From Octopus bimaculoides (lineage: Eukaryota), in contig NC_068990.1 in assembly GCF_001194135.2 (NCBI RefSeq), positions 25,263,703-25,327,702 on the forward strand: DNA of 64,000 bases, written 5' to 3'. Position numbers and translations under genes: made by a program. Positions 1 through 51,420 of the stretch are shown one piece after another (positions within the stretch are counted from its first letter, which is position 1; each line of letters begins with the position of its first letter). The notes under the pieces are model-generated. The model was not told the DNA's origin, did not search any database, and saw nothing but the letters and a program-made list of their open reading frames with translations.

Positions 1-1322
1 TTGTAAAATCAGATATTTCAACTATATTCGACAAAGTCACGATTAGATACCCTTTCTGCTGTTAATCACAAAACTGCAAGGCTAAGAATAGAAGCTACCC
101 TAACTCAAGACAGAAGGCACATATTTAAGCTAAGAGATTAAAAGGAAACATTGATCTGTCTGTAATTCAAAGTTTTGGCTTACCACCAATCACTTTATTT
201 CTTTAGTTCAATCAGTAAAGAAAGAAAACAATTCTTGGAAATAAAGAATCTTAATTATTTTCACTTAATTTTACAGGAATATCCAGAATTCCCCACCCCA
301 TCTCTTTGATGATAACTCAAAGATGATACTAATTAAAATATGATATTCTGCTTCAAGAGATATTAGAATTTTTCCTTGATATTCCCAACTTTAGATGTTT
401 AATTTGAACCAATTGACCTTATCTCTACAATAGGTACCACCATCCCTTCTTATCCAGTCCTCAAGGAAAAGAAGTTGAAAGAGATGCAATGAAGTAAAGA
501 AACCATTGTGACGACTAATTTTTACCAACATAATTATTGATTTCTTTTAACAAGGCAGAAGGCCAATTTTGCTGAGAGATTTGAGTTAATTAGGCATATC
601 TTCTTCGTTGTTTCACTTCCATTTTCCCATGAGAGAATGGTGCTTTGGTTATTACAGCTGGATAACCTTGTTATTATTTTAGTCAACCATGAAGCTCAAG
701 TAGAACCTGTTTTATTCATCAAACAAATAAAACAAGAGGCATGATCATAGTTTCCCTAAGGTCACAGCACCATGGTTGTAGTACTGTAGCATAACCATGT
801 GGTGAGTAACTCGTTTACTATTTCAGTTAGTGGTACTTATTTTAGATAGTACTATATGGGTCCATTAGCAGTACTTGGTTGACATTGTGGTACTTATTTC
901 AGGTCAAGGAACATATTTTATCCCATTGGCTCAGGAACATAAAACTTTAAACAAGACCAGTGTTTTGCAAGGTGAAACCCACACACACACAATATTGTGG
1001 TGGGGGCTTGGGACTTCAGAATAGAGTATGGGATCGCTGGAGGGATGGATAGGTGTGTTTGTGTGTATCATGTGACTGACCAGGCTATCAGATGTTGTTA
1101 AACATTGCTGGTCACAATGCGCTTATGCATTGTTTTAGCCTTCAAATGACAGCACCCCGCTGGCTAGGCGTGCAGGTCAACAATCCCCACTGATCGAAGG
1201 GGGGCTGGAGCAATGTGAAATGAAGTGTTTTACTCAAGAACACAATGTGACACCCAATCAGGGAACTGAACCCACAATCTAACAATCGTGAGTGCAACAG
1301 CCCAACCACTAGGCCACATGCC

Positions 1323-1324
<2 letters not shown>

Positions 1325-1402
<78 letters not shown>
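1325..1402. repeat. (CA)n microsatellite
   Basis: Read directly. Dozens of other CA, AT, AG, TAA and GAT tracts occur, for example (AT)n 9925-9992 and (TG)n 24180-24268. Confidence 0.99.
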
Positions 1403-1405
<3 letters not shown>

Positions 1406-2728
1406 ATAATAACAGTAACTGTTTCTAGCATAGACACAAGGCCTGAAATCTAGGGGGCAAGGGAATAATTAATACCATCAGGCCCAGTACTTGACTTTAT
1501 TTTAACAACCAAGGAAGGATGAAAAGTAAAATTGACTTCAACAGGATTTAACCTCAGAAGACAAAGGGCAGTAAACCATGTAAGGCCTTTTGTTTAATAC
1601 TCAAATAATTCTGCCAATCCACTGCCCTATTATTTATAGTAATAATAACAGCAATCTTAGGTGGTAATAGTAATAATAATAATAATAGTCCTATTATATG
1701 CAAAAGGCCTAAATTTGGGGGAGAGATTAAGTTGATTACATCGACCTCAGTGCTCAACTGGTACTTATTTTATCAACCATGAAAGGATGAAAGATAAAGT
1801 TGACTTCAGCAGAATTTCAACTTGAAACATAGCAATGGATGAAAAGCCAGTAAGCAGTTTGCCACCCTAGATAATAATAACAATGATGATAACAATAATT
1901 ATGGTTTCTTGCATAGGTGCAAGAGCAGTTCTTTTTTTTACAGTAAAATGGTATAGACAAATAAAGTAGCATATTAGTGGTTCCTTATTTTAAAAGAATT
2001 AGAGGGAATGGAATAGCAAATATACCAAGATGTGAGCTCAAAATGTCGAGAAATGAGCTTAAATTAATTTGGTGAATTAACACTTCTACTAATTTGCCGA
2101 TAAGGATTTCTTTGCTAGGGGCACAAAGCCCTTTTTTTGTTCAGACAATAATCGTGCTGACTAACGGTATATAAGTGGCTATCTTTTTACAGGGGCCAAC
2201 AGTATTAAAAAGATATCAAGGTATTTAGATAGGAGTATAAAATTAAATCTCAAATATTTAGTCTGGTCTTTCTAATGCATTGATCATCACCATCTACCTG
2301 GTGTTAAATTATTCAAGACTTTGTTGAATTATTAAACAAATAACACAGGAAAGATACAAAAATCACTAACAAATGTGAAATATCCCCAGTTTTGAAAACA
2401 GGAATAACCACAAGCCAGAGACTAACAAAAACAATAATAACAAGACACATGCGTGAAAACACATGCACACAAACACATATTCAAGACAGTGGAAGCATGT
2501 GAGTTGCTGGTAGAACAAAAACCATAACAAAAAATTTAATTTAAAAACAAAAACTTTAAAAAAAAAATGCTGGACATTTTCTTAAGCAAAAGTTGAATGT
2601 CAAGAGGCAAGACAAAAGTAGAACAAAAAATAGCTTAAAATAAATGTAAAACACTATAGAACATTTTTTTTTTTAACGAACAAAATGCTGCAACGTAAAT
2701 CCTAAATTTGCAGAAATTCAAGAAAGCA

Positions 2729-2765
<37 letters not shown>

Positions 2766-2845
2766 CTTAAATCATCACAACAACAACAATAGCAACACCA
2801 ACAGCAATAGTAAAAATAAGAAACCATGCTAGCAGAATCACTAAC

Positions 2846-2863
2846 CTGAGAGAATCTCCAATG
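2846..2863 (-). CDS. shot: 18-nt in-frame microexon within CH1: HWRFSQ (plectin exon-2alpha-like)
   Basis: The minus strand reads ttacttccaataacatgcag|CAT TGG AGA TTC TCT CAG|gttagt, phase 0/0, and follows ...KHLLK in frame. Plectin 2alpha inserts HWRAE and fly Shot inserts HWKYAK at this junction (recalled). Confidence 0.82.
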
Positions 2864-4071
2864 CTGCATGTTATTGGAAGTAAGTTGAGACCACTGTTAG
2901 ATGAGATATTAAGGTTTTATCTCATTGATATATGTATAAATATCAATAACAACAATAATAGTATCAATGCCATTAACAACATCGTAAAAAAATTATTCAA
3001 TTACCTATTTTTTTTTTTTAGAAATTTACCAGAAAAGTGGCACAGAATTGGTGGGGAGGGGGAATGTAAAAGAAATCAAATTTTGGTGACAAAAAATTCT
3101 TGGCAGAAGGAAACAATTACCCCATTTCTTGCACTTTTCCTCCTCTATGAAGAGATGATAAGAGCTATTCCAAAATTCCACTGATCAGAAGTTACACCTG
3201 TTTCATAAGACAGGTGTAATAGTAAATATTTACCATAAATTGAATGCCCAGATTAATAAAATATAAAACAGATCACATCAAATCCTACAGTTTTGATACA
3301 ACTCTGTGAAGATTACTTGAAGAGTGATGTATGTGTGTAGGTATATTATGTGATTGTGTGTGTAGATGTGAATATGTTGATATGGGGATGAATATGAGCA
3401 TAGGTTAACTAAAATATATCTATATGATAACTATCATCATCGGCTTTGCATCCATTATTCCATGCTTGCATGAATTCATTGAGGTGGATTTGTTACAGCA
3501 GGATGCTCTCCCTGCTGCCAACCATCACCTGTTTCCAAGCAAGATAATGTTTCCTCATGTCTAGACGTTTTTCTCTGAAGGCTGGAAACAAATATTTGTA
3601 TGACAGTGACACTCATTTACAAACATCATGTGATATCAAAACAAGGAGACCCCCCCACACACGCACACACACACATAAGCTTCTTTTAGTTTCCATCAAA
3701 TAAATCCATTTACAAGGCTCTGATCATTCCAAAGGTAAAATCAAAGACACTTCTGTATCTACTGAGTATCTTTACTTTCACCTGTACATCCAAATAAACA
3801 TACATGTATGCATGAAAATGAGTAAATATATAAATATGATTCGTGTTGTTTTTTTACATCTATTTTTCCACAGTAGCAGGAGTTGGACGAACACAAAAAA
3901 AATAATAGAAAATCATCTGTATTTGTATATCTCATTATCAATATTCTATATAAATATTTGTCTATTGAAATAAGTTATAGGCAATCATTTTAAATTGAAA
4001 ACGCATTAACTGAACAATTAATGTAGGCTTCAGGTTCTGCTCTTGGAACTTTTTTTTTTTTTTTTTTTTTT

Positions 4072-4699
4072 NNNNNNNNNNNNNNNNNNNNNNNNNNNNN
4101 NNNNNNNNNNNNNNNNNNNNNNNNNNNNNNNNNNNNNNNNNNNNNNNNNNNNNNNNNNNNNNNNNNNNNNNNNNNNNNNNNNNNNNNNNNNNNNNNNNNN
4201 NNNNNNNNNNNNNNNNNNNNNNNNNNNNNNNNNNNNNNNNNNNNNNNNNNNNNNNNNNNNNNNNNNNNNNNNNNNNNNNNNNNNNNNNNNNNNNNNNNNN
4301 NNNNNNNNNNNNNNNNNNNNNNNNNNNNNNNNNNNNNNNNNNNNNNNNNNNNNNNNNNNNNNNNNNNNNNNNNNNNNNNNNNNNNNNNNNNNNNNNNNNN
4401 NNNNNNNNNNNNNNNNNNNNNNNNNNNNNNNNNNNNNNNNNNNNNNNNNNNNNNNNNNNNNNNNNNNNNNNNNNNNNNNNNNNNNNNNNNNNNNNNNNNN
4501 NNNNNNNNNNNNNNNNNNNNNNNNNNNNNNNNNNNNNNNNNNNNNNNNNNNNNNNNNNNNNNNNNNNNNNNNNNNNNNNNNNNNNNNNNNNNNNNNNNNN
4601 NNNNNNNNNNNNNNNNNNNNNNNNNNNNNNNNNNNNNNNNNNNNNNNNNNNNNNNNNNNNNNNNNNNNNNNNNNNNNNNNNNNNNNNNNNNNNNNNNNN
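4072..4699. other. Assembly gap (N run) next to poly-T; smaller gaps at 37417-37431 and 40110-40119
   Basis: N characters. Confidence 0.99.
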
Positions 4700-5489
4700 A
4701 TGTTGTTGTACTTGGGGATGGTCATATTGCCAGTTTAGCCAATAATGTATGAATATGCCAGGGAAAAGATGAGAGGGAAAAGACCAGCCCCACAAATAAT
4801 TCAAAGGTTCAGGTATGGCAACATTTAACTTCACACTAAACATACCTGGACGAAGAGGGGGGAGAGATAAGGAGGAGAAAGTTATGAGAAGGGGAGAGGG
4901 AAGAGTGTGAGGTGTATGTAAGCCTGCATGTGTTTGTTTTACAAAGTGCAATCACAAGCTATAAGGTCGACAAACTGGTAAAGTTAGCTAGAAACTAGTT
5001 GAGGAGTTGATGAAGGGTCCAGATAAGATACCTTAGGAATGTTGTACAGGCAGCAGTAGAAGAGAGGATGGTAGTGGTGGTGATGCTATGTAAACATAAA
5101 GAGGTGAACCAGAAAGGATAGACTGTAGTCATTAATTAACTTCTATACAGATCTCGGTTAAATGTCAATGTATTTCAAAACAAATCCTGGTCAACCGCCC
5201 CCCACCACCACAGACTGTACAACTGTTGTAAGGTGATGTTAATGCAGTTTGGTGATTAGCTGCACCACCATAATTAACACTACCACCACCATCACAAACA
5301 CTACTGCCACTATCACCCCCACACCGATCACCAAAACTACCACATTCACTTCTACACAACTGACATGACTACTATTACTGCCACCACCACCACCAAGTAA
5401 CACTGCTGTCACCACATTCAATACTATGACAGGTACTCCCATTGCCATCCTTCTGCCACCACCCCACCACTATTATCAGTATGTATGTA

Positions 5490-5546
<57 letters not shown>

Positions 5547-6824
5547 ATTATCATTATTATCATCATCATCATCATTTAACATCCATTGTCCATGCTAGCA
5601 TGGGTTGGACGGTTTGAACAGGACTGGTTAGCTGAAGGCTGCACTAGACTCAAGTCTAATTTGGCATGGCTTTTACAGCTGGATGTCCTTCCTAACATCA
5701 ACCACTGTGAGTGTCATGGGTGCTTTTACGTGCAACCAACACAGGTGCCAGTTACGTGACTGAGTCCATTTGGCATTATACCATGCTTGAGAAGAAGACC
5801 CATCAAGCCAAGTAAAACCGCAGTCGTAGCAGATACCAGTGTCACGCAAATAGCATCCGTGCCAGTAACATGTAAAAGCACTTTTTACGCTCTCAGAATG
5901 GTTGGTGTTAGGAAGAAACCGTAGGAACCGTGCCAAATCAGACTGAAGCCTGATGCAGCCTTCCAGCTTACCAGCCCCAGTCAAACCGTCCAACCCATGC
6001 CAGCATGGACAACAGACATTGAAGAATGATGATGATGATGTGACTAGGCTATATCCTACTCTACCAGATATTTTAAGCACACTCACACACGCACATATAT
6101 ATACACACACACACACACACAAGAGGGGGGTGCATACACACACTGATTCACCAGCATGGTAGATTTTCCCAAAATTGGCCTCAGCAAGATTTGATCTCAA
6201 AATCTAAAGCAGTAGAACAAATACTGCAGAGTATTTTTGACACATCAATGATTCAGCAATTCACCATACACATAATGAAAAGATCTGTATATTTACTAAT
6301 ACACTATTGTAGTAGATTTTTCTGAAATCTCATTCATCAGTGACACTGTGCAGGAGATTAGAAACTTAAAAACATTTTTCAACAATAATTTCTATAAATC
6401 TAAAGAAACAACAGAATCATTCAAATAAATTTAATTAGGAATAATTAGATCATGAAATGTACAAAGAAATAAAAAGTCAATGGCACAATATCGTTATAGA
6501 ATCATATATTCAAATGACCTCTTTCATCTTAAATTAAATAAAGTAAAAATACAATTGGAAGTCTATAAACAAAGTAATATTGCCATAGCAACAACAATGT
6601 CAGTTCCAATAAATTCAAGAGTATTATGTGAATTTTTATGCATGTGAAAAGTATAAATAATACACACACACACACACACAGGTGCAGGCTGTGTCTTCTG
6701 CTCTAGCCCTGGGTTGACCACAGCCCTGTGGATGGATTTGGTGGTTGGAAACTGAATGTAGTGTATTATGTGTGTGTGTGTGTAGGAATTAGTTCTTGAA
6801 GCACATAAATGCTATAAATATTCT

Positions 6825-7038
6825 TTTCTTTTCTACTCTAGGCACAAGGCCTGAAGTTTTTGGGGAGGGGGCCAGTCGATAAGATCAACCCCAGTACATA
6901 ACTGGTACCTAATTTATCAATCCTGAAAGGATGAAAGCAAAGTTGACCTTAGCGGAATTTGAACAGAGAACACAAAGACATGAAATACCGCCAAGCATTT
7001 TTCCCAGCGTGCCAACATTTCTGCCAGCTCGCCACCTT
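6825..7038 (-). mobile_element. tRNA-derived SINE family C
   Basis: The minus strand reads aaggtggcgagctggcagaa...gttcaaattccgc...gactttgctttcatcc...gtaccagtt...ggg. Many further copies occur, for example 37075-37315 (+) and 62270-62870 (-). Confidence 0.85.
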
Positions 7039-8634
7039 ATAAATGCTATAAATATTAACATGTAAATGTTGGGTTGAAAAACCCCTATAGATAGAAAAGT
7101 CAAAGGCTGCCTCTGGACTTGAACCTACATCTCCAGTAGACTTTATAGATATTCTACCATTGTATTAAAGCAATCCTTTAAATTTCTCTCTACATTTTAG
7201 AAACTTTATTCTTACCAGCAAGAATTCTATGTTGTTGATGTCAAACATTTATGTGTTTTGAGAACATATTCCAAAAAATTATTATTTCACGTTCTCTTGA
7301 AAGTTTATAAAATCTTTAAGGCATCATCACACACAGACACACACACACACACATTAGTCATTGAAGGAGGGGGAGTGTCCATCACCTTTGCGTTAATCTT
7401 TGACTGGTGAGATTAATGAAAGCTGATGCTGTCAGTACTACACATCATCAGATCAGTCTTGAAGACAGAATGTGTTCCTGACCCAAGCAGATTCTTCAAT
7501 ACTTGGAACATCAATGTAGTTTATATTCACCTAAAACATTAAAGTTGGGAAGGAAATTCCAGAGGAAGGAAGGATTGGATGAAGTTTTGATAGCATTGAG
7601 ACACAGCAAGGGAGAGGATGACAGAGAATCAGAGAGGTGGATGTTCTGAGTGAACTGGTATGGCTGGCAAAAGTGTATGAAAGTAACTCTTTTAAAAGGG
7701 GACGAATAGTAGTAGTGGTGGTAGTGGTGGTACTGCAGATGGTGGCAGCAGGAGCTTTCTTTTGAATTTGGAACGGAATGGTCTTGTGAGTAGCATCAGC
7801 AGCATCAGTAGTATCTTCCTAAATGTGTGTGGGGGGGGAGGGTAGTAGTGCATTGTGGGTCTTACTTGAGTGAACAAGAATAACCGTGGGTGAGGAAAGA
7901 GGAATACAGCACAAGGGCTTGCAACAGAATGAACTCTGCTATTGACACCCAAGAACTAAATGGTTGTAGTGATGATGGTGGTAGTGATGTTAACTGGGTC
8001 AGAATGTTAGGCATTTACAAACACACTACTCCCACCACACACACACACACACAAATGTATATACATGCATGCACACACTTTCACAGTGATAATATTTATT
8101 TTGATCTGTTCAAGTCATGGGACACATCTGTTTAATGAGATGAATCAATGCTAATAAGACACAGCAGTCATTTCATAGTCATTATTACTATTATTATTAT
8201 TATTATCACCATCAAAACATGGCCTTATTTATGATACACGGTATTCATCGTTAGGTTTTTATGACATGCACAATTCATGATCAAATAAACCAAATAATTG
8301 CCAACTGTTTACAAAAAGACAATCCCACTCACACATGTTGCATGATATGCACACACACACACACACACACACACACAGCATGATATGTGCAACACAAAAC
8401 ATACATTATACACAAACACATAATCATTATTTTAACATCTACTTTTTCTATGCTTGCATGGGTCAGACAGAATTCTTAGAGGCAGATTTTTTCTATAGCC
8501 ACAAAGCCTTTGTCATCAACCTTCCAAGCAAATTAATAATTCCCTATAATTGAACCTGTTTCCATTGAATGCTAAAGAGTTGAGGTATACACGAGTATAT
8601 CACACATGCCATATATATATTCATAAGTCCAGAC

Positions 8635-24270: not shown

Positions 24271-26149
24271 ACATACACACACACAAACACACATTGTAAT
24301 ATCATTTTAAGTAGGTTTACTTACATTCTACAGCTATGAAAATCTAACTGAATGACCTTCACATTGCGATGCATCCAGATGCAACATCTTGTAACCCTAT
24401 CACGAAAAACCCATTAGCTTAATAGCAATGAGAGTCTGTAAACCAAATATGATAAATAAACTGTAGCAAAGATGGATAATTTATGAAAATAGGGACAACA
24501 CTTAATGCCAAACTATTGGAGTAGATGTGTGTTATCATTATTAACGGTGCCTGTTGGTTGTTTCAATTAAATAATGTAGCTTCTCTATAGCAAGAAACCT
24601 GTTCTGGCCTCTCATACACTACAGTCCTTGGACCTATCAGGCCTGTTGAACCATCTAACCCATGCCAGCATGGAAGATGGTCATTAAAAGATGATGAGGG
24701 TAGCGATGTTGATGGTGATAATGGAAAGGAAGAAGAGTCAATTATGAAGTCTCTATATCAGTAGTTCTCAAACCTTTTTTTTAATATCAAGGCCAGATCC
24801 AAAACCTGAATTTTTTAGGGGCCCACAACAAAAAAAGGTAAAACACAATTGAATTGCAGAAAAATTTATCACATTTATAGAGGGAAGGCTGTTAGGAGTA
24901 CCAGAAGGATACCACAATTGAGAACTGCTGCTCCATATATTTATTCAATATATTAGAAATAACAGCCAAGTTCCCTCAAATATGCCTCAGATATTTATCA
25001 TTATTAGTAATTAAGAAGGTGCATGGTTTTGTGGCTAGGGTGTTGCACTCACAATCTTACAATCACAGTTTCAATTCCTGCAGTGGGTGGTGTGTTGAGT
25101 TCTTGATCAAAACACTTCCTTTCACATTGCTGCAGCCCACTCAGCTGTAAACAAGTCCCAGTGATAATTGGGAAGTTAACCTTTTGATGGACTAGCATCT
25201 TGTCCATGGGGGAGTATTGTAATCTCAATCACTTACACACCATGGAAACCAGTTTAAGTTCTGGTTTTATGAGTCCTAGTGGTTTATGACAGACCTACAT
25301 TATTAATTAAAAAACAGGAAGAAATAGAAAGAGATTTAACAGATGCTGGTTTTGAGCCACTAAGAAAGATATGTATCTCTTGCTTCAATCAACAAGAGAC
25401 CTTCTGTATAGTTGTTTGATCTGCTAAATATAGCAACTAAATCTTTAAGTGACACCTATCAATTTTAGATACATCATTGAACGTAGTCAATTACGTACAG
25501 TAAGAATGGTCAAAACTGAATGCTTTTGATCATGGGTCAGCTTGACCAAGACAGGCCTGGGGTTAAACAACAGCACTTGGGCGAATTTGCCTGACTGACA
25601 GAAATAAATCACATTTATTTCATGGTTGAGTATTTAGCAAAACAAAGGACATCCTTCAGTAAATAACATTTACTCCAACATCAGACTTCTGTAAGCAAGT
25701 AAAACTGGGTGTAAAATAATGAAATAAGTAAATAAATAATGCTGGTTGTTATTAATGTCAACACTGTAGATAGATAAATAATAGACTTGTTTGTCAAGCA
25801 GTCTTAAGCTTATTTATAGTGAAAACATTAGTGTTTAGCCCCCAATACATTTAAGGAATATTGATTTGATTCAATAAAGTGCGTATTTGATAATGAAATG
25901 TTAATTCATGGACGCTGGCCAGACCATCATATGTAGATGTGAATTATGGGAGCAAGAGGTTTTATATTTGTGCGTGTGATGGCTGACCACTTGTGATTAT
26001 TGGTGGATAAACATACATGCTTGCAGATATTGGAAAACAAGCTTCCTCCCATTCACTGCAATGTGTTTTAGAGTAGCTTGTTTAAATTCTACATGGAAAA
26101 TGCATGATTTTACAAAAATGTCCACTCCTGTCTACTCTTATTTCCTCCA

Positions 26150-28974: not shown

Positions 28975-29580
28975 GGTCATGTGATGTGTATGGATGAGGA
29001 CAGCTGTGTAAAGAAGTACTGATGTCTGTGAAGAGAACCTGTGGTAGAAGTAGACCCAGAAAGATATGGGACAAGGTAGTGAAGCACAATCTTCAAACTT
29101 TGAGCCTCACAAAGGCAATAACTGGTGACCAAAACCTTTGGCAATGTGCTGAGCTTGAGAGGACCCGTCAAGCCAATTGCACCTGTGCTGGTGGCATGTA
29201 CAGAACACCTTTCAAGTGTTGGTCCTCACAGGGGCAAAGTTCCTTTCGAGTGTTGGGCCTCATGGAGGCAATGACCAAGACCTTTGGCATTATGTTGTGC
29301 TTGAGAAGAAGACCCATCAAGCCAAGCAAAATCGCAGTCATGGCAGATACCGGTGTCATGCAAATTGGCACCTGTGCTGGTGGCATGTAAACACACCTGC
29401 TGTCATGCTGGTGGCACATAAAAGTACCCATTACACTCTTGGAGTGGTTGGTGTTAGGAAGTGCATTCAGCCCTAAAAAACCATGTCAAATCAGACTGGA
29501 GTCTGGTGCAGCCTTCCAGCATGGTCAAACCGTCCAACCCATGCTAGAATGGACAATGGACGTTAAACGGTGATGATGAT
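28975..29580 (+). mobile_element. RTE LINE 3' end plus 3' UTR with internal tandem duplication and gatgat tail
   Basis: Same family as 11550-12205 (GHV..MDEDSC...GRSRPRKIW). Confidence 0.85.
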
Positions 29581-31711: not shown

Positions 31712-31774
31712 NNNNNNNNNNNNNNNNNNNNNNNNNNNNNNNNNNNNNNNNNNNNNNNNNNNNNNNNNNNNNNN

Positions 31775-35195: not shown

Positions 35196-38100
35196 AAGCA
35201 ATAAAAACACCCAGTCCACTCTTGTAAAATGGTTGGCATTAGGAAGGGCACCCAGCCATAGAAACCATGTCAAAGCAGACATCGGAGATCAATGCAGTCT
35301 TCTGGCTTGTTGGATCTTGTCAAATCTTCCAACTCATGTCAGCATGGGATACGGATGTCAAATAATTATAATTTGTGTTTTAAAAATGGATTAGTCCTCT
35401 ACAATGTACACAACTTTGTACCCTTTTATGAACCAAACCGTACCAAGTTAAATCATTGTTCCAAATTTAGTATTTTGCTCGTCTTTATTTTGTCACAAAT
35501 TCACTCCTTTCTCCAATAATGATAAACAAGTTAGCACACATGACTTGACATCAACATCAGAAACAAGGCACAAGCAAGATACAAAACTTAGGATATTATT
35601 ACAAAACCTTCACTCATTTCAGAATTACAAATACAAGCAAATTCAAAACACAGCTTTGGAAGCAGAAATGTAAATATTCGTTAATAAATTATTTTCCCCT
35701 GTCTCTGTATTTATAACTACTCTAGATTTCAGAGAGTAAATCAGTAACTTAGAAATAATGCAGCCAATATACCCTATACTTCAAGTGATTTCAAAAACAT
35801 CAAACACAGCTGGAGTGCAATGAAGGACCTAATTCTCAGAAAAAACTGACTTTTCTCAGAATGAAGACCTTCACTATTACCTGTAAGCTAAAGGAACCAT
35901 TGTAGTCACACAATCTGCTAAAAATAGCAGCCACATCTCTCAAATTACATACTTAAAAAATGCAAAGGGGACATTGGTTGATATAGTCCAAGTGTGAATA
36001 AAAACATGGTCAGAATGCTGTGACCAACATGGTTAACCTGGGGCTGAACAAACTGAACAACAGCTTTTATGTCAGTGACACAACTATCACACGATGTCAA
36101 GAAGGCACAGATATACATACACATATAAACATATATATGTATAAATGCAGGATTCCTTAGTCAAGTGTCTTTTACTCCTGTCCTGGACAAACCAAATCTT
36201 TGTGAGTGGATTTGGTAGGCAGAAACTGAAAGAAGCTCATTATGTGTGCATCATTATCATATATATATATATATATATTTTTCCCCTGACCCCCTCACCC
36301 AGTTCAGTCCTTTATATCACTACCTATATTCACCCCCACCACTGTACCTTGAGGGTATGTTCTGATGTATATTTACCACCATCTCTCCCACACTATCTTT
36401 CTCTTTGAATCTCTTTCTCTCCCTTCTTTAACTGGGATATCTCTTCTACAGCAAGATACCTATCTCTATCTATTATTCTTTTAACCTCTCATCAACTGGT
36501 GCAAAGCCATCCCCTTCAATACTACTCCCCCAGTCAAGGGGACTTTATCTTGTTATACAAGTTACTTGGTGACCCCCACCAGTGCCATGAAAAAAAGTAC
36601 CCACTCTGTAAAGTGGTTGGTGTTAAGAAGGGCACCCAGCCATAGAAACCATGCCAAAACAGACAATAGTGCTTGGCACAGCTCTCCAGCTCTTGTCAAA
36701 CCATCCAACCCATGCCCACATGGGGAATAGATGTTAAATGATGATGATATATGGGGGACTGGACCCATGTGTTGATGTAAATGAGCATCTCCATCATACA
36801 AGTGAGGTTGTTCATTTTCAGTCTCTTGTGAAAAACAAATCTGTCCATGGGAAAGTATTACCTTGCTTGGAAACATGCGAGGGTTGGCAACAGAAAAGGC
36901 ATCCAGCCATAGAAAATCTGCGTTAATGAACTCCGTCTCACCCATGGAGTATTGAAAGTCAAAGTGATAATGATGATGATTATCATCATTGTTGTTCGCA
37001 GTATCATGTCAACCAAATACAAAGATTCTGGAAGCTCTTGCATCATAATGCTGGCGTTACTATTGATTAGTTAATCAAGGCAGTGAGCTGGCAGAATTGT
37101 TAGCAAGCCAGCCAAAATGCCTGGCAGCATTTCATCCATCTTTACATTCAGAGTTCAAATTCCACCAAGGTCAACTTTACCTTTCATACTTTCAGGGCCA
37201 ATAAAATTCAAATAGCAGTTGAGCATTGCGAGAGATGGGGGGAGGGGGTGGCAATGTAATGGACTTACCCCACCTCCAAAATTGCTGGCCTTATGCCAAA
37301 ATTTGAAACCAATATTCATTAGCTAATCATCTGAAAAACTCCACTAAACAGCTGTTTGGTATCACAAGTTTATAAGCATTTCTTTTTTCTTCTGTCTTTT
37401 TTTTTTTTTTTTTTAANNNNNNNNNNNNNNNNTTTTTTTTTTTTTTTTTTTTTTAATAAAACTGTTTTGAGGTCTGACATTGCGTGTGAGATGTCAACTT
37501 TTTAACCCATACAAAATGGAATATTTAGATTAAAATGAAAAAAATCACATGGCAATAAATAAGTGTCAATGTCAATTTATTGTCCAAATTACTAATAACA
37601 GAATGTGAACAAGATAAAGAATAAGGTAGGAATGGTAGAAATTCATGCAATATTTGCCACCCTATAAACAGTTGAATGTTACATTGATGGCTGAAATACA
37701 ATGATGACTAAATACATTTCATTCAGTCATCATTGTTTATGTATGTTTGCATGGATCAGGTGGAATTTGTTGAATTAAGACTTTCTATGACTGGATGCCC
37801 TGCTTGTCACCAACCTTCATTTGTTTCCAGGCAAAGTAATACATCTAGTTCTTTGAACAAGAACAGCATAATGGCCAAATACATTTTTGTAGAAGATTGC
37901 AAATATATGACATCACTTGTATGACGTTATTGATAACTATTGCATGATGTCAATACAAAGAGCTGCAAACACACACATATCTACACACACACACATGTAT
38001 ATACATACATATGTGGCAGGCTTCTTTCAGTTTATATTTAGCAAATGCACTCATAAGACCCTGGTCAACCTGAGGCTATAGAAAAAGACACTTGCATAAA

Positions 38101-40109: not shown

Positions 40110-41537
40110 NNNNNNNNNNCACACACACACACACACACACATTCATGCTTTCCTCTCCCCCTTTCTATGTATATAAAGAGAGGGGGAGGGAGAAAGAGAC
40201 CTTATACAGCATGATCGGTAATGATGTGCACGAAATCGAAAATGGATTCCAGTCTAAAATGTAATCAATCAGCTGGGCCTGTACGTAAATCGTTAACCTA
40301 TATCAGTGCGCTTGTGTGTATCTTTATATGGCTAGATTTAACTACACACACACACACACATATATACACACACACACACACACGTATGCATTCATGTGTT
40401 GCATCAAGCAGAAAAACAAAACAAACAAAAACTAAATAGCAGTGGAGTGAGTCATCAGATTCGCACAAATTATTTTATTTTACATGAAACACTTTCAGGG
40501 GTTCGAACTCGCTGCGCAGCACCCTGCTCAATTTTTTTTTTAATATCATAGTCTTGGATCGAAGCCATAAGCTTATCGGTGAATTCGGGTAAGACGTGAT
40601 AATTGCGTTGCGTATGCGCATGTATATATGCACGCACACACACACACATATGTGTGTGTGTGTGTGTGTATGTGTGTAGTACATGTATTTTATAATGCAT
40701 AATATTTTATAATATATATTGTGTATCATTCGTAAGTAAAATCAATCTTATATACATATATGTATATATACAATATATATTATGCAGAATAAGTGCGCAA
40801 GCGAGTAGAGAGAAAGGGAGGCAGAGATGGGGTTACATATATCACAAACACTTGTAAAGGTAACGAGACACTTTAGAAGACGTGTCTCTGAAATGGTTTC
40901 GAATCTTAATAGCAGGTATTTGCACTTTACTCCCAACTATGTTCACTCAATTTTACGAATGATACATCGGTGCCCCCACCCTCCACAATCAAACATGAAG
41001 CATGAAGCAGAAACTGGAAAAACAATTGCTGTTAGAACACGTGTGTCCGTGAAATATCTTATCAATGGGTGGTACGTGTCTTTTAGAATGGAGAAAGTGA
41101 TATGGAGAGAAATGGGAGGACATATATACACGCACACGTGTTTAAGTGTCAAATTTATGAGGTAGACAGCATCGATATTTATCACTATGCAAATAATATA
41201 ATTGTTTCTGATTCAGACACAAGGCCGGTAATTTGCAAGGGAAGGAGCTAATCGATATCACGAAGCCCAGTACTTGATTGATACCTTATTCCATCGAACC
41301 GGGAGGGACGAAAGGCAAATTTAACCTGAGCGGGATTTGAATACGCTTTCGATCGTCAAAGAAATGAGGTTTTTGCATGAAGGTGGTTTGGTGGTAGTAT
41401 AATCATTATAGTAAGCTAGTAATTAATTAACAGTACCTAGAAAATAATGATAGTTTGGAATAGCAGAGCAACCAGTCTTAGCTGTAAGAACGGTGAATAG
41501 ACACAACACTTTATTATTTTTTTTTATATATACATAC

Positions 41538-41599
41538 CTTAAGTAAATGTTTATTCACCCATTTGGTGAAAGTCTTTTTCTGTACGGCATCTCTCTCGT
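41538..41599 (-). CDS. shot: Spectraplakin (Shot/dystonin/MACF1/plectin family) common exon, start of the CH1 actin-binding domain: (D)ERDAVQKKTFTKWVNKHLLK
   Basis: The minus strand reads tctttttgtttctatttcag|AC GAG AGA GAT GCC GTA CAG AAA AAG ACT TTC ACC AAA TGG GTG AAT AAA CAT TTA CTT AAG|gtatgt. The exon is 62 nt, phase 1 in and phase 0 out. The peptide matches the DERD(R/A)VQKKTFTKWVNKHL signature of plectin, DST, MACF1 and Shot, with the same phase-1 junction where alternative first exons join. Confidence 0.97.
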
Positions 41600-41799: not shown

Positions 41800-41878
41800 C
41801 TGTATCTTTTTTCCGATTTTCTTCATACTGTACCATCACATCAGGCATTTCAGGGTCCATATAACCAGGCGTATCCAT
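41800..41878 (-). CDS. shot: Spectraplakin second alternative N-terminal exon, short type: MDTPGYMDPEMPDVMVQYEENRKKDT
   Basis: The start context tcaaaATGG is strong and has an in-frame TAA upstream. The 79 nt end GAT ACA G|gtaact (phase 1), and a 200-nt intron leads to the CH1 acceptor. There is loose resemblance to the dystonin-a1 leader (GYLSP...QAYEDVLERYKDERD, recalled). Confidence 0.8.
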
Positions 41879-43608: not shown

Positions 43609-43708
43609 CTGCAATTCTCAAAACTGCTCTGTCTGCAGGGTCCAACTGTAAAATACATAAGGGAAGCTGCAGGTCCCTATAATCCTGAAAGTCTATTCCT
43701 AGATCCAT
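43609..43708 (-). CDS. shot: Spectraplakin alternative N-terminal exon, plectin-1c / dystonin-a2 / Shot-B type: MDLGIDFQDYRDLQLPLCILQLDPADRAVLRIA
   Basis: ATG at 43708 with an in-frame TAA upstream. The 100 nt end GCA G|gtaagt (phase 1) and join 41599 to give LDPADRAVLRIADERD, matching LDPAERAVLRIADERD of vertebrate DST/MACF1/plectin-1c. The intron is 43608-41600. In-frame internal acceptors at 43684 (tttcag|GAT) and 43645 (tttacag|TTG) make the 5' boundary uncertain. Confidence 0.92.
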
Positions 43709-50299: not shown

Positions 50300-51420
50300 A
50301 AGAATCAGCAGTTAAAAAAATGAAGGAAATACAAGTTGGGAAACAAGGAGAAAATGTACTAGTGAAAGTTGGGCAAGAACCAGTTGATGAAGTTACAAGC
50401 TTCACATATCTGGGAAGTATAGTGACAAGCAATGGCGATGCACAGACAGATGTAAGCTGCAGAATTGGACAGGCAGTGGCAGTATTTAGAAGACTGACAA
50501 CATTTTGGTGACATAAGTGTAGAGCTGAAGATTCATCTATACAAAACAGCAATATTCTTTTCTACTCTAGGTACAAGGTCCGAAATTTTTGGGGGGAGGG
50601 GGCCAGTGAATTAGATCGACCCCACTACACAACTGGTACTTAATTTATTGTTTCTGAAAGGATGAAAGACAGAGTCAACCTCAGCGGAATTTGAACTCAG
50701 AACATAAAGACAAACGAAATACCACTAAGCAACTTGCCTGGCATGCTAATGTTTCTTATTTCTTTATTGCCCACAAGGGGCTACACACAGAGGGGACAAA
50801 CAAGGACAGACAAATGGATTAAGTCGATTACATCAACCCCAGTGCATAACTGGTACTTATTTAATTGACCCTAAAAGGATGAAAGGCAAAGTCAACCTCA
50901 GCAGAATTTGGACTCAGAACGTAGCGGCAGATGAAATACCTGGCATGCTAATGTTTCTGCCTTACAAAACAGCAATATTGCCAATAGAGATCTATGCAGC
51001 TGAGACCTGGAAGATGACAGCAAAAATCACCTACCAACTTGACGTATTTCATCAGCAGTGCCTCAGAAGGATCCTAAGAAACACTTATCGAGACAAAGTG
51101 ACAAATGGAACCATTCTCCAAGCAGCAAGAGTAAGGCCCCTGCATGCAATTGTAACTGAGCAACAAATGAGAATGACTGGACACATACTAAAACTGCCAG
51201 AAGAGAGGCTTGCCAGAACAGCCATGGGCTGGATGCCACGGGAAGTTGAGAGAAAAAGAGGCTGGCCAAGGTAGACATGGTGTAGTACCTTCAAAGAAGA
51301 CCTACGCAGACAGCACATCACCTGAGAAGAAGCATACCAGTTGACCACAGACAGAGACAACTGGTGATCACTGACTGCCTGATGTGCTGCTCAAAGGCAC
51401 CAACAGACCTAAAGAAGAAG
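50300..51420 (+). mobile_element. RTE-clade LINE 3' fragment (RT C-terminus), degraded and interrupted
   Basis: Motifs V..FTYLGS...D...RIGQA...F..L and IYAAETW...LDVFHQQCLRRIL...VTN...GHIL..PEERL..W.P..RKRG.P, followed by a (GAA)n tail. Confidence 0.9.
50557..50962 (-). mobile_element. Tandem pair of family C SINEs inserted into an RTE LINE, 17-bp target-site duplication
   Basis: tacaaaacagcaatatt occurs at both 50540-50556 and 50963-50979. RTE coding similarity resumes after the second copy. Confidence 0.9.

What the first reader, a model, noticed from the sequence alone, without database searches (positions are those of the whole stretch)
2846..2863. Hidden 6-aa microexon (HWRFSQ) in the CH1 actin-binding domain of an octopus-like spectraplakin
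Seen: an 18-nt AG...GT-bounded, phase-0, stop-free exon lies 38.7 kb downstream of the KHLLK exon and gives KHLLK-HWRFSQ. Known (recalled): mouse plectin exon 2alpha inserts HWRAE at this exact junction in brain and muscle and alters actin binding, and Drosophila Shot isoforms carry HWKYAK here. Inference: a regulated HW-initiated microexon that tunes F-actin affinity is shared by all three major bilaterian lineages, and so is ancient. Gene predictors easily miss it. I do not know whether it is annotated in cephalopods.
Basis: partly seen in the sequence, partly recalled or inferred. Interest (0 to 1): 0.8.

Follow-up and report, generated by a model that had tools for sequence, protein, structure and literature searches.

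The report
Ancient HW microexon in octopus spectraplakin
This is a real 18-base alternative exon that adds six amino acids (HWRFSQ) to the actin-binding domain of an octopus cytoskeletal linker protein; it is already in the public annotation, and it appears to be the counterpart of plectin exon 2alpha, present in molluscs, an annelid, arthropods, a priapulid, an acorn worm and vertebrates.

Summary
The 18 nt CATTGGAGATTCTCTCAG lie at window 2846-2863 on the minus strand. They are AG/GT-bounded and sit 38.7 kb downstream of the CH1 exon ending KHLLK.

On sequence alone this is not significant. Shuffled introns give an AG|HW...|GT candidate in 27-42% of trials.

Comparative evidence shows the exon is real.
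- It is not hidden. Octopus bimaculoides RefSeq "plectin" isoforms X1-X9, whose first exons match the window exactly, show three states at this junction: skipped, +HWRFSQ, and a 48-nt form (WSQLTSNNMQHWRFSQ, window 2846-2893) made from an upstream acceptor. A 2015-era model already carried HWRFSQ.
- The same hexapeptide, with only synonymous differences, is in Argonauta and Lottia DNA and in a Haliotis isoform.
Fish plectin has the 15-nt exon 2alpha.

Homology with plectin exon 2alpha and an ancient bilaterian origin are therefore well supported. Tuning of actin binding is extrapolated from plectin and was not tested. I found no paper describing the cross-phylum conservation.

The parts
2846..2863 (-). 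18-nt cassette microexon, short form, encoding HWRFSQ (phase 0-0)
   Evidence: Sequence. Present in O. bimaculoides RefSeq isoforms X3, X6, X8 and in XP_014786349.1. Same peptide in Argonauta and Lottia DNA, with only synonymous differences, and in a Haliotis isoform.
2846..2893 (-). 48-nt long form of the same exon (WSQLTSNNMQHWRFSQ), made from an upstream 3' splice site
   Evidence: Contiguous in-frame extension found. Present in RefSeq isoforms X1, X2, X4. Counterparts of similar length: Haliotis WYPLPVDYMQHWRFSQ, Lottia RSTQTVQFTFMQHWRFSQ, Argonauta WSQLPSDNMQHWRFSQ.
2864..2868 (-). Proximal 3' splice site UGCAG (UGC at -5 to -3, then AG)
   Evidence: UGCAG|CA(U/C)UGG also found in Argonauta, Lottia, Priapulus and D. 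grimshawi. A UGC motif close to the 3' splice site is a feature of eMIC-dependent microexons (PMC8797185).
2894..2900 (-). CUAAC branch-point-like motif (2896-2900) followed directly by the distal acceptor AG (2894-2895)
   Evidence: CUAAC lies 37 nt upstream of the proximal acceptor and is identical in Argonauta. Assigning it as the branch point is an inference.
2844..2845 (-). 5' splice site GU (CAG|GUUAGU)
   Evidence: Donors in the other species: GUU in Lottia and Priapulus, GUC in Argonauta, and GUA in Capitella, Menopon, D. grimshawi, Saccoglossus and fish plectin.
2773..2910 (-). Island of Octopus-Argonauta conservation around the exon, including a GCAUG at 2825-2829 (+17 from the 5' splice site)
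   Evidence: Pairwise alignment: near-identity across the island, with flanks that do not align. Motif scan. A regulatory role is inferred only.
41538..41598 (-). Constitutive CH1 exon 2 encoding (D)ERDAVQKKTFTKWVNKHLLK; phase 1 at its start, phase 0 at its end
   Evidence: Matches O. bimaculoides isoforms exactly.
41800..41878 (-). Alternative first coding exon B (MDTPGYMDPEMPDVMVQYEENRKKDT + G)
   Evidence: It is the N-terminus of isoforms X2, X6, X7 and of XP_014786349.1.
43609..43708 (-). Alternative first coding exon A (MDLGIDFQDYRDLQLPLCILQLDPADRAVLRIA + G)
   Evidence: It is the N-terminus of isoforms X1, X3, X4, X5, X8, X9.

Best explanation
Window 2846-2863 (minus strand) is a genuine, alternatively spliced cassette microexon in the long intron that splits helix A of the first calponin-homology (CH1) domain of the Octopus bimaculoides spectraplakin. 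RefSeq annotates this N-terminal part as 'plectin'.

Shown at the annotation level: three outcomes exist. The exon is skipped (KHLLK|ASRRI), included as 18 nt (+HWRFSQ), or included as 48 nt from an upstream acceptor (+WSQLTSNNMQHWRFSQ).

Inferred with good support: it is the orthologue of vertebrate plectin exon 2alpha (HWRAE) and of an HW microexon found across Bilateria. It shares the same intron, the same phase, a length of 15-18 nt, the first two codons CAY-UGG, and a position in the 3' part of the intron.

Inferred by analogy with plectin: the insert lengthens the end of helix A and the A-B loop beside the actin-binding surface, and so changes F-actin binding (and possibly microtubule binding) in tissues that include it.

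Inferred from motifs only: inclusion is probably promoted by a neural/muscle splicing programme. The exon has UGC next to the 3' AG, a CUAAC branch point, a weak 5' splice site and a conserved downstream GCAUG.
For: (1) Annotation. O. bimaculoides XP_052827041-049 have first exons identical to the window and show the skip, +6 aa and +16 aa states. The older XP_014786349.1 also carries HWRFSQ. The gene lies in GCA_001194135.2.

(2) Deep conservation of the identical peptide. Argonauta DNA reads CACTGGAGATTTTCGCAG and Lottia DNA reads CATTGGAGATTTTCACAG. They differ from Octopus at 3 and 2 positions, all synonymous. Haliotis XP_071119797.1 has ...MQHWRFSQ.

(3) The same intron holds exactly one AG|HW..|GT element of 15 or 18 nt in each of 9 species. 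Per-intron chance from shuffles is 0.001-0.12. Three of these loci had annotated models without any HW insert, so they served as prior tests: D. grimshawi HWKYAK (chance 0.001), Capitella HWILCK (0.008) and Argonauta HWRFSQ.

(4) Annotated proteins carry HW inserts at this junction in Saccoglossus, Priapulus, spiders, a horseshoe crab, a scorpion, a louse, an aphid, a psyllid, a butterfly, and plectin from shark, bony fishes, a bird and mammals.

(5) Octopus and Argonauta share a conservation island of about 140 nt centred on the exon, inside an intron that otherwise does not align.

(6) Function of the plectin counterpart: 5 aa, neural/muscle expression, enhanced actin binding, and, together with exon 3alpha, enhanced microtubule binding (PMC8464768, PMC7891324). 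Solved plectin structures exist with and without HWRAE.

(7) The AF2 model of isoform X3 ends helix A at the first insert residue and places the rest of the insert in a loop.

(8) The cis motifs match the published eMIC-exon architecture (one search compared).
Against: - I examined no RNA-seq reads. RefSeq X-isoforms are computed models, so transcript support is indirect.
- Tissue specificity and any effect on actin binding were not tested in any invertebrate.
- The AF2 confidence at the insert is modest: mean pLDDT 68 for residues 51-60.
- The conserved UGCAG could reflect coding of Met-Gln in the long form rather than a splicing enhancer.
- The AG-exclusion zone expected for eMIC exons is interrupted at -32 by the distal acceptor.
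- GCAUG within 200 nt downstream is seen in only 5 of 9 species (about 2 expected by chance), so that motif is only suggestive.
- Only the first two residues are conserved across phyla.
Confidence: 0.85

Rival explanations
1. Chance pseudo-exon: an AG...GT-bounded open 18-mer that happens to start with His-Trp in a very long AT-rich intron, and is never spliced in.
For: Shuffled introns give such a candidate in 27-42% of trials. The intron holds 1387 phase-0 AG..GT candidates.
Against: The identical hexapeptide, with only synonymous nucleotide differences, is in Argonauta and Lottia DNA and in a Haliotis isoform. The exon is present in six RefSeq isoforms and an older model. There is a conservation island with Argonauta.
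Confidence: 0.02
2. Convergence: the K|A junction of CH1 is a hotspot where short exons arise repeatedly. On this view the HW exons of molluscs, arthropods, hemichordates and vertebrate plectin are independent inventions, not orthologues.
For: The literature favours convergence for most microexons that share a position between fly and mouse (PMC8797185). Other, non-HW inserts occur at the same junction: the arthropod Cys-rich exon, Mytilus CRS, and P0460 and P0468. Only HW is conserved across phyla, and vertebrate plectin has 15 nt rather than 18.
Against: The exons share the same intron and phase. The length is 18 nt in all seven non-vertebrate loci read, from five phyla. The first six nucleotides, CA(U/C)UGG, are the same in all 9 species. 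The exon lies in the 3' part of the intron, 0.5-2.4 kb from exon 3 in seven of the eight species where exon 3 was located. UGCAG acceptors are shared by molluscs, a priapulid and a fly.
Confidence: 0.1
3. The biologically dominant product is the 48-nt exon (16 aa). On this view the 18-nt form is a minor product of a tandem 3' splice site, or the reverse, so 'a 6-aa microexon' would be an incomplete description of the unit.
For: The long form is annotated in Octopus (X1, X2, X4), Haliotis and Lottia. In all four molluscs the upstream extension is in frame and stop-free, at 30-36 nt. The extension is 26/30 identical between Octopus and Argonauta.
Against: The extension is not conserved as protein between mollusc classes, except for the terminal Met-Gln. 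Non-molluscs have only the 18-nt (or 15-nt) exon. CUAAC lies 3 nt before the distal AG, which favours the proximal AG if that branch point is used. No read counts are available.
Confidence: 0.3
4. The insert mainly modulates something other than F-actin affinity: microtubule binding, binding of other partners of the actin-binding domain, or the closed/open CH1-CH2 equilibrium.
For: Plectin fragments containing 2alpha+3alpha co-sediment far better with microtubules (52% and 36.5%, compared with weak binding without them; PMC7891324). The octopus gene also has a second cassette in the CH1-CH2 linker.
Against: Exon 2alpha alone is reported to enhance actin binding (PMC8464768 citing Fuchs et al.). 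No data exist for any invertebrate.
Confidence: 0.3

Closest known systems
Vertebrate plectin exon 2alpha (HWRAE / HWKAE)
   Same: It is spliced between the exon ending KHL(I/L/M)K and the exon starting A(Q/S)R..., in phase 0. It begins with CAY-UGG (His-Trp) and is an optional cassette. In the one fish plectin locus read it lies 2.4 kb upstream of exon 3.
   Different: It is 15 nt (5 aa) rather than 18 nt (6 aa). No long form from an upstream acceptor is known to me. The fish acceptor lacks UGCAG. Its function is demonstrated only for plectin.
Drosophila Shot / arthropod spectraplakin HW microexon (HWKYAK, HWKYMK, HWKYSK, HWRYLE...)
   Same: It is 18 nt, in the same intron and phase, with an acaUGCAG|CAUUGG acceptor identical to the octopus one in D. 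grimshawi.
   Different: In arthropods it is followed by a second, Cys-rich cassette (xYTCLHVC...CC.P) that was not found in the octopus window. A review notes CH1 length variation among Shot isoforms but draws no link to plectin 2alpha (10.1101/122010).
Srrm234/SRRM4 eMIC-dependent neural microexons
   Same: The exon is 27 nt or shorter. It has UGC next to the 3' AG, a CUAAY branch-point motif, a UCUC-containing pyrimidine stretch, and weak splice sites (PMC8797185).
   Different: Dependence on the eMIC domain and neural specificity were not tested. An AG at -32 breaks the AG-exclusion zone; that AG is itself the distal acceptor.
Plectin exon 3alpha (12 aa) and the octopus CH1-CH2 linker cassette
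   Same: These are further short optional exons in the same actin-binding domain, combined combinatorially with the HW exon.
   Different: They occupy different positions and have different sequences. The octopus 15-aa cassette AKSCLVAQLQLHEKQ follows ILHFQ and lies outside the window.

Membership tests
Plectin exon 2alpha-type HW microexon of plakin/spectraplakin CH1 | Lies in the phase-0 intron after ...KWVNKHLxK (helix A of CH1), before the exon starting A/V-x-R-x-(I/V) | tested here: met
   KHLLK | HWRFSQ | ASRRISELFDDL.
Plectin exon 2alpha-type HW microexon of plakin/spectraplakin CH1 | AG/GT-bounded cassette of 15-18 nt, a multiple of 3, beginning CAY-UGG (His-Trp) | tested here: met
   comparison of 9 species.
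Plectin exon 2alpha-type HW microexon of plakin/spectraplakin CH1 | Optional: both inclusion and skipping isoforms exist | tested here: met
   RefSeq isoforms X5/X7/X9 skip it, X3/X6/X8 carry +6 aa, and X1/X2/X4 carry +16 aa. These are models; no reads were examined.
Plectin exon 2alpha-type HW microexon of plakin/spectraplakin CH1 | Inclusion enriched in nervous tissue and muscle | not testable with these tools
   No RNA-seq access. For plectin, see PMC8464768 and PMC7891324.
Plectin exon 2alpha-type HW microexon of plakin/spectraplakin CH1 | Insert increases F-actin binding of the actin-binding domain | not testable with these tools
   Known only for plectin. The AF2 model places the insert at the end of helix A and in the A-B loop.
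eMIC (Srrm234)-dependent neural microexon | Cis architecture: UGC close to the 3' splice site, CUAAY branch point, long pyrimidine/UCUC tract, long AG-exclusion zone, weak splice sites | tested here: inconclusive
   UGC at -5, CUAAC at -37, UCUC present, and a GUUAGU donor. However, there is an AG at -32, and the pyrimidine tract is short. Reference features come from PMC8797185.
eMIC (Srrm234)-dependent neural microexon | Inclusion depends on the eMIC domain and is neuron-specific | not testable with these tools
   Needs expression or perturbation data.
Spectraplakin (MACF1/DST/Shot) gene | N-terminal tandem CH1-CH2 actin-binding domain with alternative first exons, followed by a giant plakin/spectrin-repeat body | tested here: inconclusive
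   CH domains confirmed (Pfam PF00307). Two alternative first exons found. The closest full-length relative is Haliotis MACF1-like. A product of 11,201 residues starts 3 kb downstream on the same strand, but its sequence and domains were not examined.

The most novel reading that the evidence does not exclude
The HW microexon is a single exon inherited from the bilaterian ancestor, more than 550 million years ago. It has been kept as an optional 18-nt cassette (15 nt in vertebrate plectin) in the CH1 domain of the spectraplakin/plakin lineage in molluscs, annelids, arthropods, priapulids, hemichordates and vertebrates. This would make it one of very few microexons conserved across all three bilaterian superphyla. 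It may be a surviving member of the ancestral neural (eMIC/Rbfox-type) splicing programme, acting as a universal switch of cytoskeletal-linker binding.
Probability: 0.6. Interest if true: 0.6.

Novelty: already known. Interest (0 to 1): 0.42.

Why it matters
The octopus exon itself is ordinary. It is annotated, and it is the expected counterpart of a characterised plectin exon.

The value lies in the comparative result it led to. Published comparisons found only four eMIC-regulated exons in equivalent positions between fly and mouse, and favoured convergence for most of them (PMC8797185). An optional microexon sits at the same codon boundary of the same helix, starts with the same two codons, and is present from Drosophila Shot and octopus to human plectin. 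It would be a rare, clean example of a pan-bilaterian microexon.

It also gives a concrete hypothesis that can be tested in genetically tractable animals such as fly Shot: that a 5-6-residue insert at the end of CH1 helix A is an ancient switch for actin and microtubule engagement by giant cytolinkers.

On the practical side, the exon is missing from several gene models (Argonauta, Capitella, D. grimshawi GH22957), where it can now be added.

Tried and rejected
- A 60-aa chimeric query returned only proteins of 42-105 aa. The tool appears to restrict targets to about 0.7-1.75 times the query length, so full-length spectraplakins never appear. It found no octopus sequence, only plectin with HWRAE.
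- The mechanical ORF across the microexon is not on record.
- A 4995-aa Haliotis query timed out.
- Isoform X3 could not be looked up because only the longest product per gene is on record. For X1, the octopus gene range of 112.8 kb was too long for DNA retrieval, so exon 3 of Octopus was never seen. The Tachypleus locus was also too long.
- I first looked for Haliotis 'WYPLPVDYMQ' as a separate upstream microexon. It turned out to be a contiguous extension of the same exon.
- Sequence-only significance was tested and rejected.
- Downstream GCAUG as a universal feature was rejected: 5 of 9 species compared with about 2 expected.
- The opposite strand was checked. The 107-aa ORF at 2861-3184(+) has no Pfam match, and there is no Rfam family in 1-8000.
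- Literature searches for 'HWRAE', for microexon plus spectraplakin names and for microexon plus plectin found nothing describing the conservation. Absence from this library is not proof of novelty.

Full report
OBSERVATION. The 18-mer CATTGGAGATTCTCTCAG occurs once in the window, at 2846-2863 on the minus strand. On that strand it reads ...ctcatctaacagTGGTCTCAACTTACTTCCAATAACATGCAG|CATTGGAGATTCTCTCAG|gttagtgattctgctagcatgg.... The upstream CH1 exon encodes (D)ERDAVQKKTFTKWVNKHLLK. It lies at 41538-41598 (minus), with a strong acceptor (ttgtttctatttcAG) and donor (AAG|gtatgt). The microexon starts 38,674 nt after that donor. tblastn with a CH1-CH2 query finds no further CH1 exon in the window, so the candidate sits inside the intron that follows KHLLK, and exon 3 lies beyond window position 1. 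The description is therefore correct, apart from the unstated strand.

IS IT MORE THAN CHANCE? Not from the sequence alone. The 41.5 kb of intron in the window contains 1387 phase-0, stop-free AG..GT candidates of 3-51 nt. In 2000 dinucleotide-preserving shuffles, at least one AG|His-Trp...|GT candidate appears in 42% (6-51 nt) or 27% (12-27 nt). It appears in 3.4% if the third residue must be Arg or Lys.

IT IS ALREADY ANNOTATED. A search seeded with window-encoded exons returned Octopus bimaculoides RefSeq 'plectin' isoforms. Their N-terminal exons are identical to the window. MDLGIDFQDYRDLQLPLCILQLDPADRAVLRIA is encoded at 43609-43708, and MDTPGYMDPEMPDVMVQYEENRKKDT at 41800-41878, both on the minus strand. 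So the window is O. bimaculoides (assembly GCA_001194135.2). The nine isoforms XP_052827041-049 show three states at the junction:
- KHLLK|ASRRISELFDDL (X5, X7, X9);
- KHLLK-HWRFSQ-ASRRI (X3, X6, X8);
- KHLLK-WSQLTSNNMQHWRFSQ-ASRRI (X1, X2, X4).

The older model XP_014786349.1 already contains HWRFSQ. The 16-aa form is the same exon extended 30 nt upstream to a second acceptor (ctaacAG|TGG), giving window 2846-2893. So 'hidden' is wrong for this species, and the unit is a cassette with tandem 3' splice sites. I saw no reads. RefSeq X-isoforms are computed models, so transcript support is indirect.

INDEPENDENT EVIDENCE THAT IT IS CODING.
- Haliotis cracherodii XP_071119797.1 reads KHLLK-WYPLPVDYMQHWRFSQ-AGRRI.
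- Lottia gigantea LOTGIDRAFT_162645 reads KHLIK-RSTQTVQFTFMQHWRFSQ-TGRRI. Its genomic exon is tcaTGCAG|CATTGGAGATTTTCACAG|gtttgt, with 2 differences from Octopus, both synonymous.
- In the octopod Argonauta hians the annotated model lacks the exon, but the intron contains ataTGCAG|CACTGGAGATTTTCGCAG|gtcagt. This is HWRFSQ with 3 synonymous differences. It lies 38.3 kb after exon 2 and 19.5 kb before exon 3.
- An Octopus-Argonauta alignment shows near-identity from about 15 nt upstream of the distal acceptor to about 70 nt downstream of the donor (window ~2773-2910). The flanking intron does not align.

A CROSS-PHYLUM HW MICROEXON. A library-wide search with a plectin fragment carrying HWRAE, a profile search, and cluster look-ups found HW-initiated inserts at exactly this junction in many annotated proteins:
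- Plectin: mammals, a bird and a shark (HWRAE); teleosts (HWKAE, HWWVK).
- Hemichordate Saccoglossus: HWKHDE. An older model of the same gene lacks it.
- Priapulus: HWHYVQ.
- Chelicerates: spiders and a scorpion (HWRYLE), a horseshoe crab (HWRYVE).
- Insects: a louse (HWKYMK), an aphid (HWKYSK), a psyllid (HWNYFQ), a butterfly (HWKYLK).

I fetched the loci and read the DNA. In every case there is exactly one AG|CA(T/C)TGG...|GT element of 18 nt (15 nt in fish plectin) in the intron between exon 2 and exon 3. It lies 0.5-2.4 kb upstream of exon 3 in every species except Argonauta (19.5 kb); in Octopus, exon 3 lies outside the window.

Two loci whose annotated models have no HW insert served as prior tests:
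- Drosophila grimshawi has acaTGCAG|CATTGGAAGTATGCCAAG|gtataa.
- Capitella teleta has cccAG|CACTGGATTTTATGCAAG|gtaaac, encoding HWILCK.

Shuffle-based chance of such an element per intron is 0.001 (Drosophila), 0.004 (Menopon), 0.008 (Capitella), 0.025-0.041 (fish, Lottia, Priapulus) and about 0.1 for the very long introns. Common ancestry is the economical reading. Convergence at a 'hotspot' cannot be excluded, because only His-Trp is shared across phyla and other inserts also occur at this junction.

HOW IT PROBABLY WORKS. For plectin the literature states the following (PMC8464768, PMC7891324). Exon 2alpha encodes 5 residues between exons 2 and 3. It is used in brain and muscle. It enhances actin binding. 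Together with exon 3alpha it markedly increases co-sedimentation with microtubules. Solved plectin actin-binding domains exist with HWRAE (1MB8, 1SH5, 1SH6) and without it (4Q57-59, 3F7P). An AlphaFold2 model of octopus isoform X3 (mean pLDDT 72) makes helix A run through residues 24-55. The helix ends at the His of the insert, and Trp56-Glu67 is non-helical. Confidence there is lower, with a mean of 68 for residues 51-60. By inference, the insert remodels the end of helix A and the A-B loop next to the actin-binding surface. Whether it raises actin affinity in octopus is untested.

Regulation is inferred from motifs only. The proximal acceptor is UGCAG, and the same acceptor is found in Argonauta, Lottia, Priapulus and Drosophila. 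A CUAAC lies 37 nt upstream, followed by UCUC-containing pyrimidines, and the donor is weak (GUUAGU). These features resemble those reported for eMIC-dependent exons in fly and mammals (PMC8797185). A GCAUG at +17 is conserved between the two octopods. (U)GCAUG occurs within 200 nt downstream in 5 of 9 species, which is only suggestive.

COMPARISON AND NOVELTY. The element meets every sequence-level criterion of the plectin exon 2alpha type: junction, phase, size, HW start and optional use. Its expression and biochemical criteria could not be tested. As a feature of the octopus genome it is already known, because it is in RefSeq. What I could not find in the searchable literature is any statement that plectin 2alpha has orthologues in Shot and across Bilateria. 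A Shot review mentions only that CH1 length varies among isoforms. Given the reported scarcity of microexons shared between phyla, that comparative point is of moderate interest.

OTHER STRAND AND ARTEFACTS. The plus-strand ORF 2861-3184 has no Pfam match, and no Rfam family is found in 1-8000. The window has N gaps at 4072-4699, 31712-31774, 37417-37432 and 40110-40119. None touches the parts described.

Noticed in passing
window 43609-43708 (-) and 41800-41878 (-): Two alternative first coding exons, each with its own ATG and ending in phase 1. Both splice to the CH1 exon at 41538-41598. They match the two N-termini of the O. bimaculoides isoforms and have homologues in Haliotis/Priapulus/Tachypleus and in Lottia/Pinctada/Argonauta respectively.
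   Followed up: yes
O. bimaculoides GCA_001194135.2 locus; outside the window: The RefSeq 'plectin' model (at most 295 aa, spanning 112.8 kb) ends in what looks like intron read-through (...LLDAEGKFLFSLKYLFLNFESCRWIWIWIWNQFL). It is followed 3 kb downstream, on the same strand, by a gene with an 11,201-residue product. These are probably one giant spectraplakin gene split in two by the annotation.
   Followed up: partly
L004:8788-8850 (Menopon); L007 about 24540-24600 (D. grimshawi); proteins P0184, P0164, P0232, P0218, P0402, P0407, P0410: Arthropods carry a second optional exon right after the HW microexon. It encodes a Cys-rich peptide (xYTCLHVC....CC.P, about 17-21 aa) inside CH1. It occurs with or without the HW exon (the spider Oedothorax has both versions). 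Its function is unknown, and no counterpart was detected in the octopus window.
   Followed up: partly
L006:41772-41789 (Argonauta hians); L008:7047-7064 (Capitella teleta); L007:24432-24449 (Drosophila grimshawi): The HW microexon is present in the DNA but absent from the deposited gene models (P0436, P0213, P0181). The Capitella model instead has an odd RKIVFIPK insert at the junction, which is probably a mis-modelled splice.
   Followed up: yes
O. bimaculoides isoforms X1, X2, X3, X5, X6, X7; outside the window: A further optional 15-aa cassette (AKSCLVAQLQLHEKQ) sits between ILHFQ and ISDVVVPGQ, in the CH1-CH2 linker. It is combined freely with the three states of the HW exon and the two first exons.
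   Followed up: no
window 2773-2845 (-), especially 2825-2829: The intron downstream of the microexon is almost identical between Octopus and Argonauta for about 70 nt. This stretch includes GCAUG at +17 and a (UGU/GUU)-rich run. It may be a splicing enhancer.
   Followed up: partly
proteins P0348 (Mytilus, CRS), P0460 (RPHNHPH), P0468 (HVGNNRR), P0228 (SLRK), P0409 (HRRGPE): Other short, non-HW inserts sit at the same K|A junction in assorted gene models or contigs. They may be lineage-specific exons or modelling artefacts. They bear on the 'hotspot' alternative.
   Followed up: no
window 4072-4699, 31712-31774, 37417-37432, 40110-40119; 2731-2763; 50879-51274 (+), 29022-29390 (+); 5673-6200 (-) and 36562-36945 (-): Assembly gaps (N runs); a (TAA)n microsatellite 80 nt downstream of the microexon; ORF fragments that look like retrotransposon (reverse-transcriptase tail) remnants; and a repeated element that shares the peptide-like motif ...SSSFN..CP/SPCxHGLDGLT.AG.L... 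at two places in the intron.
   Followed up: no
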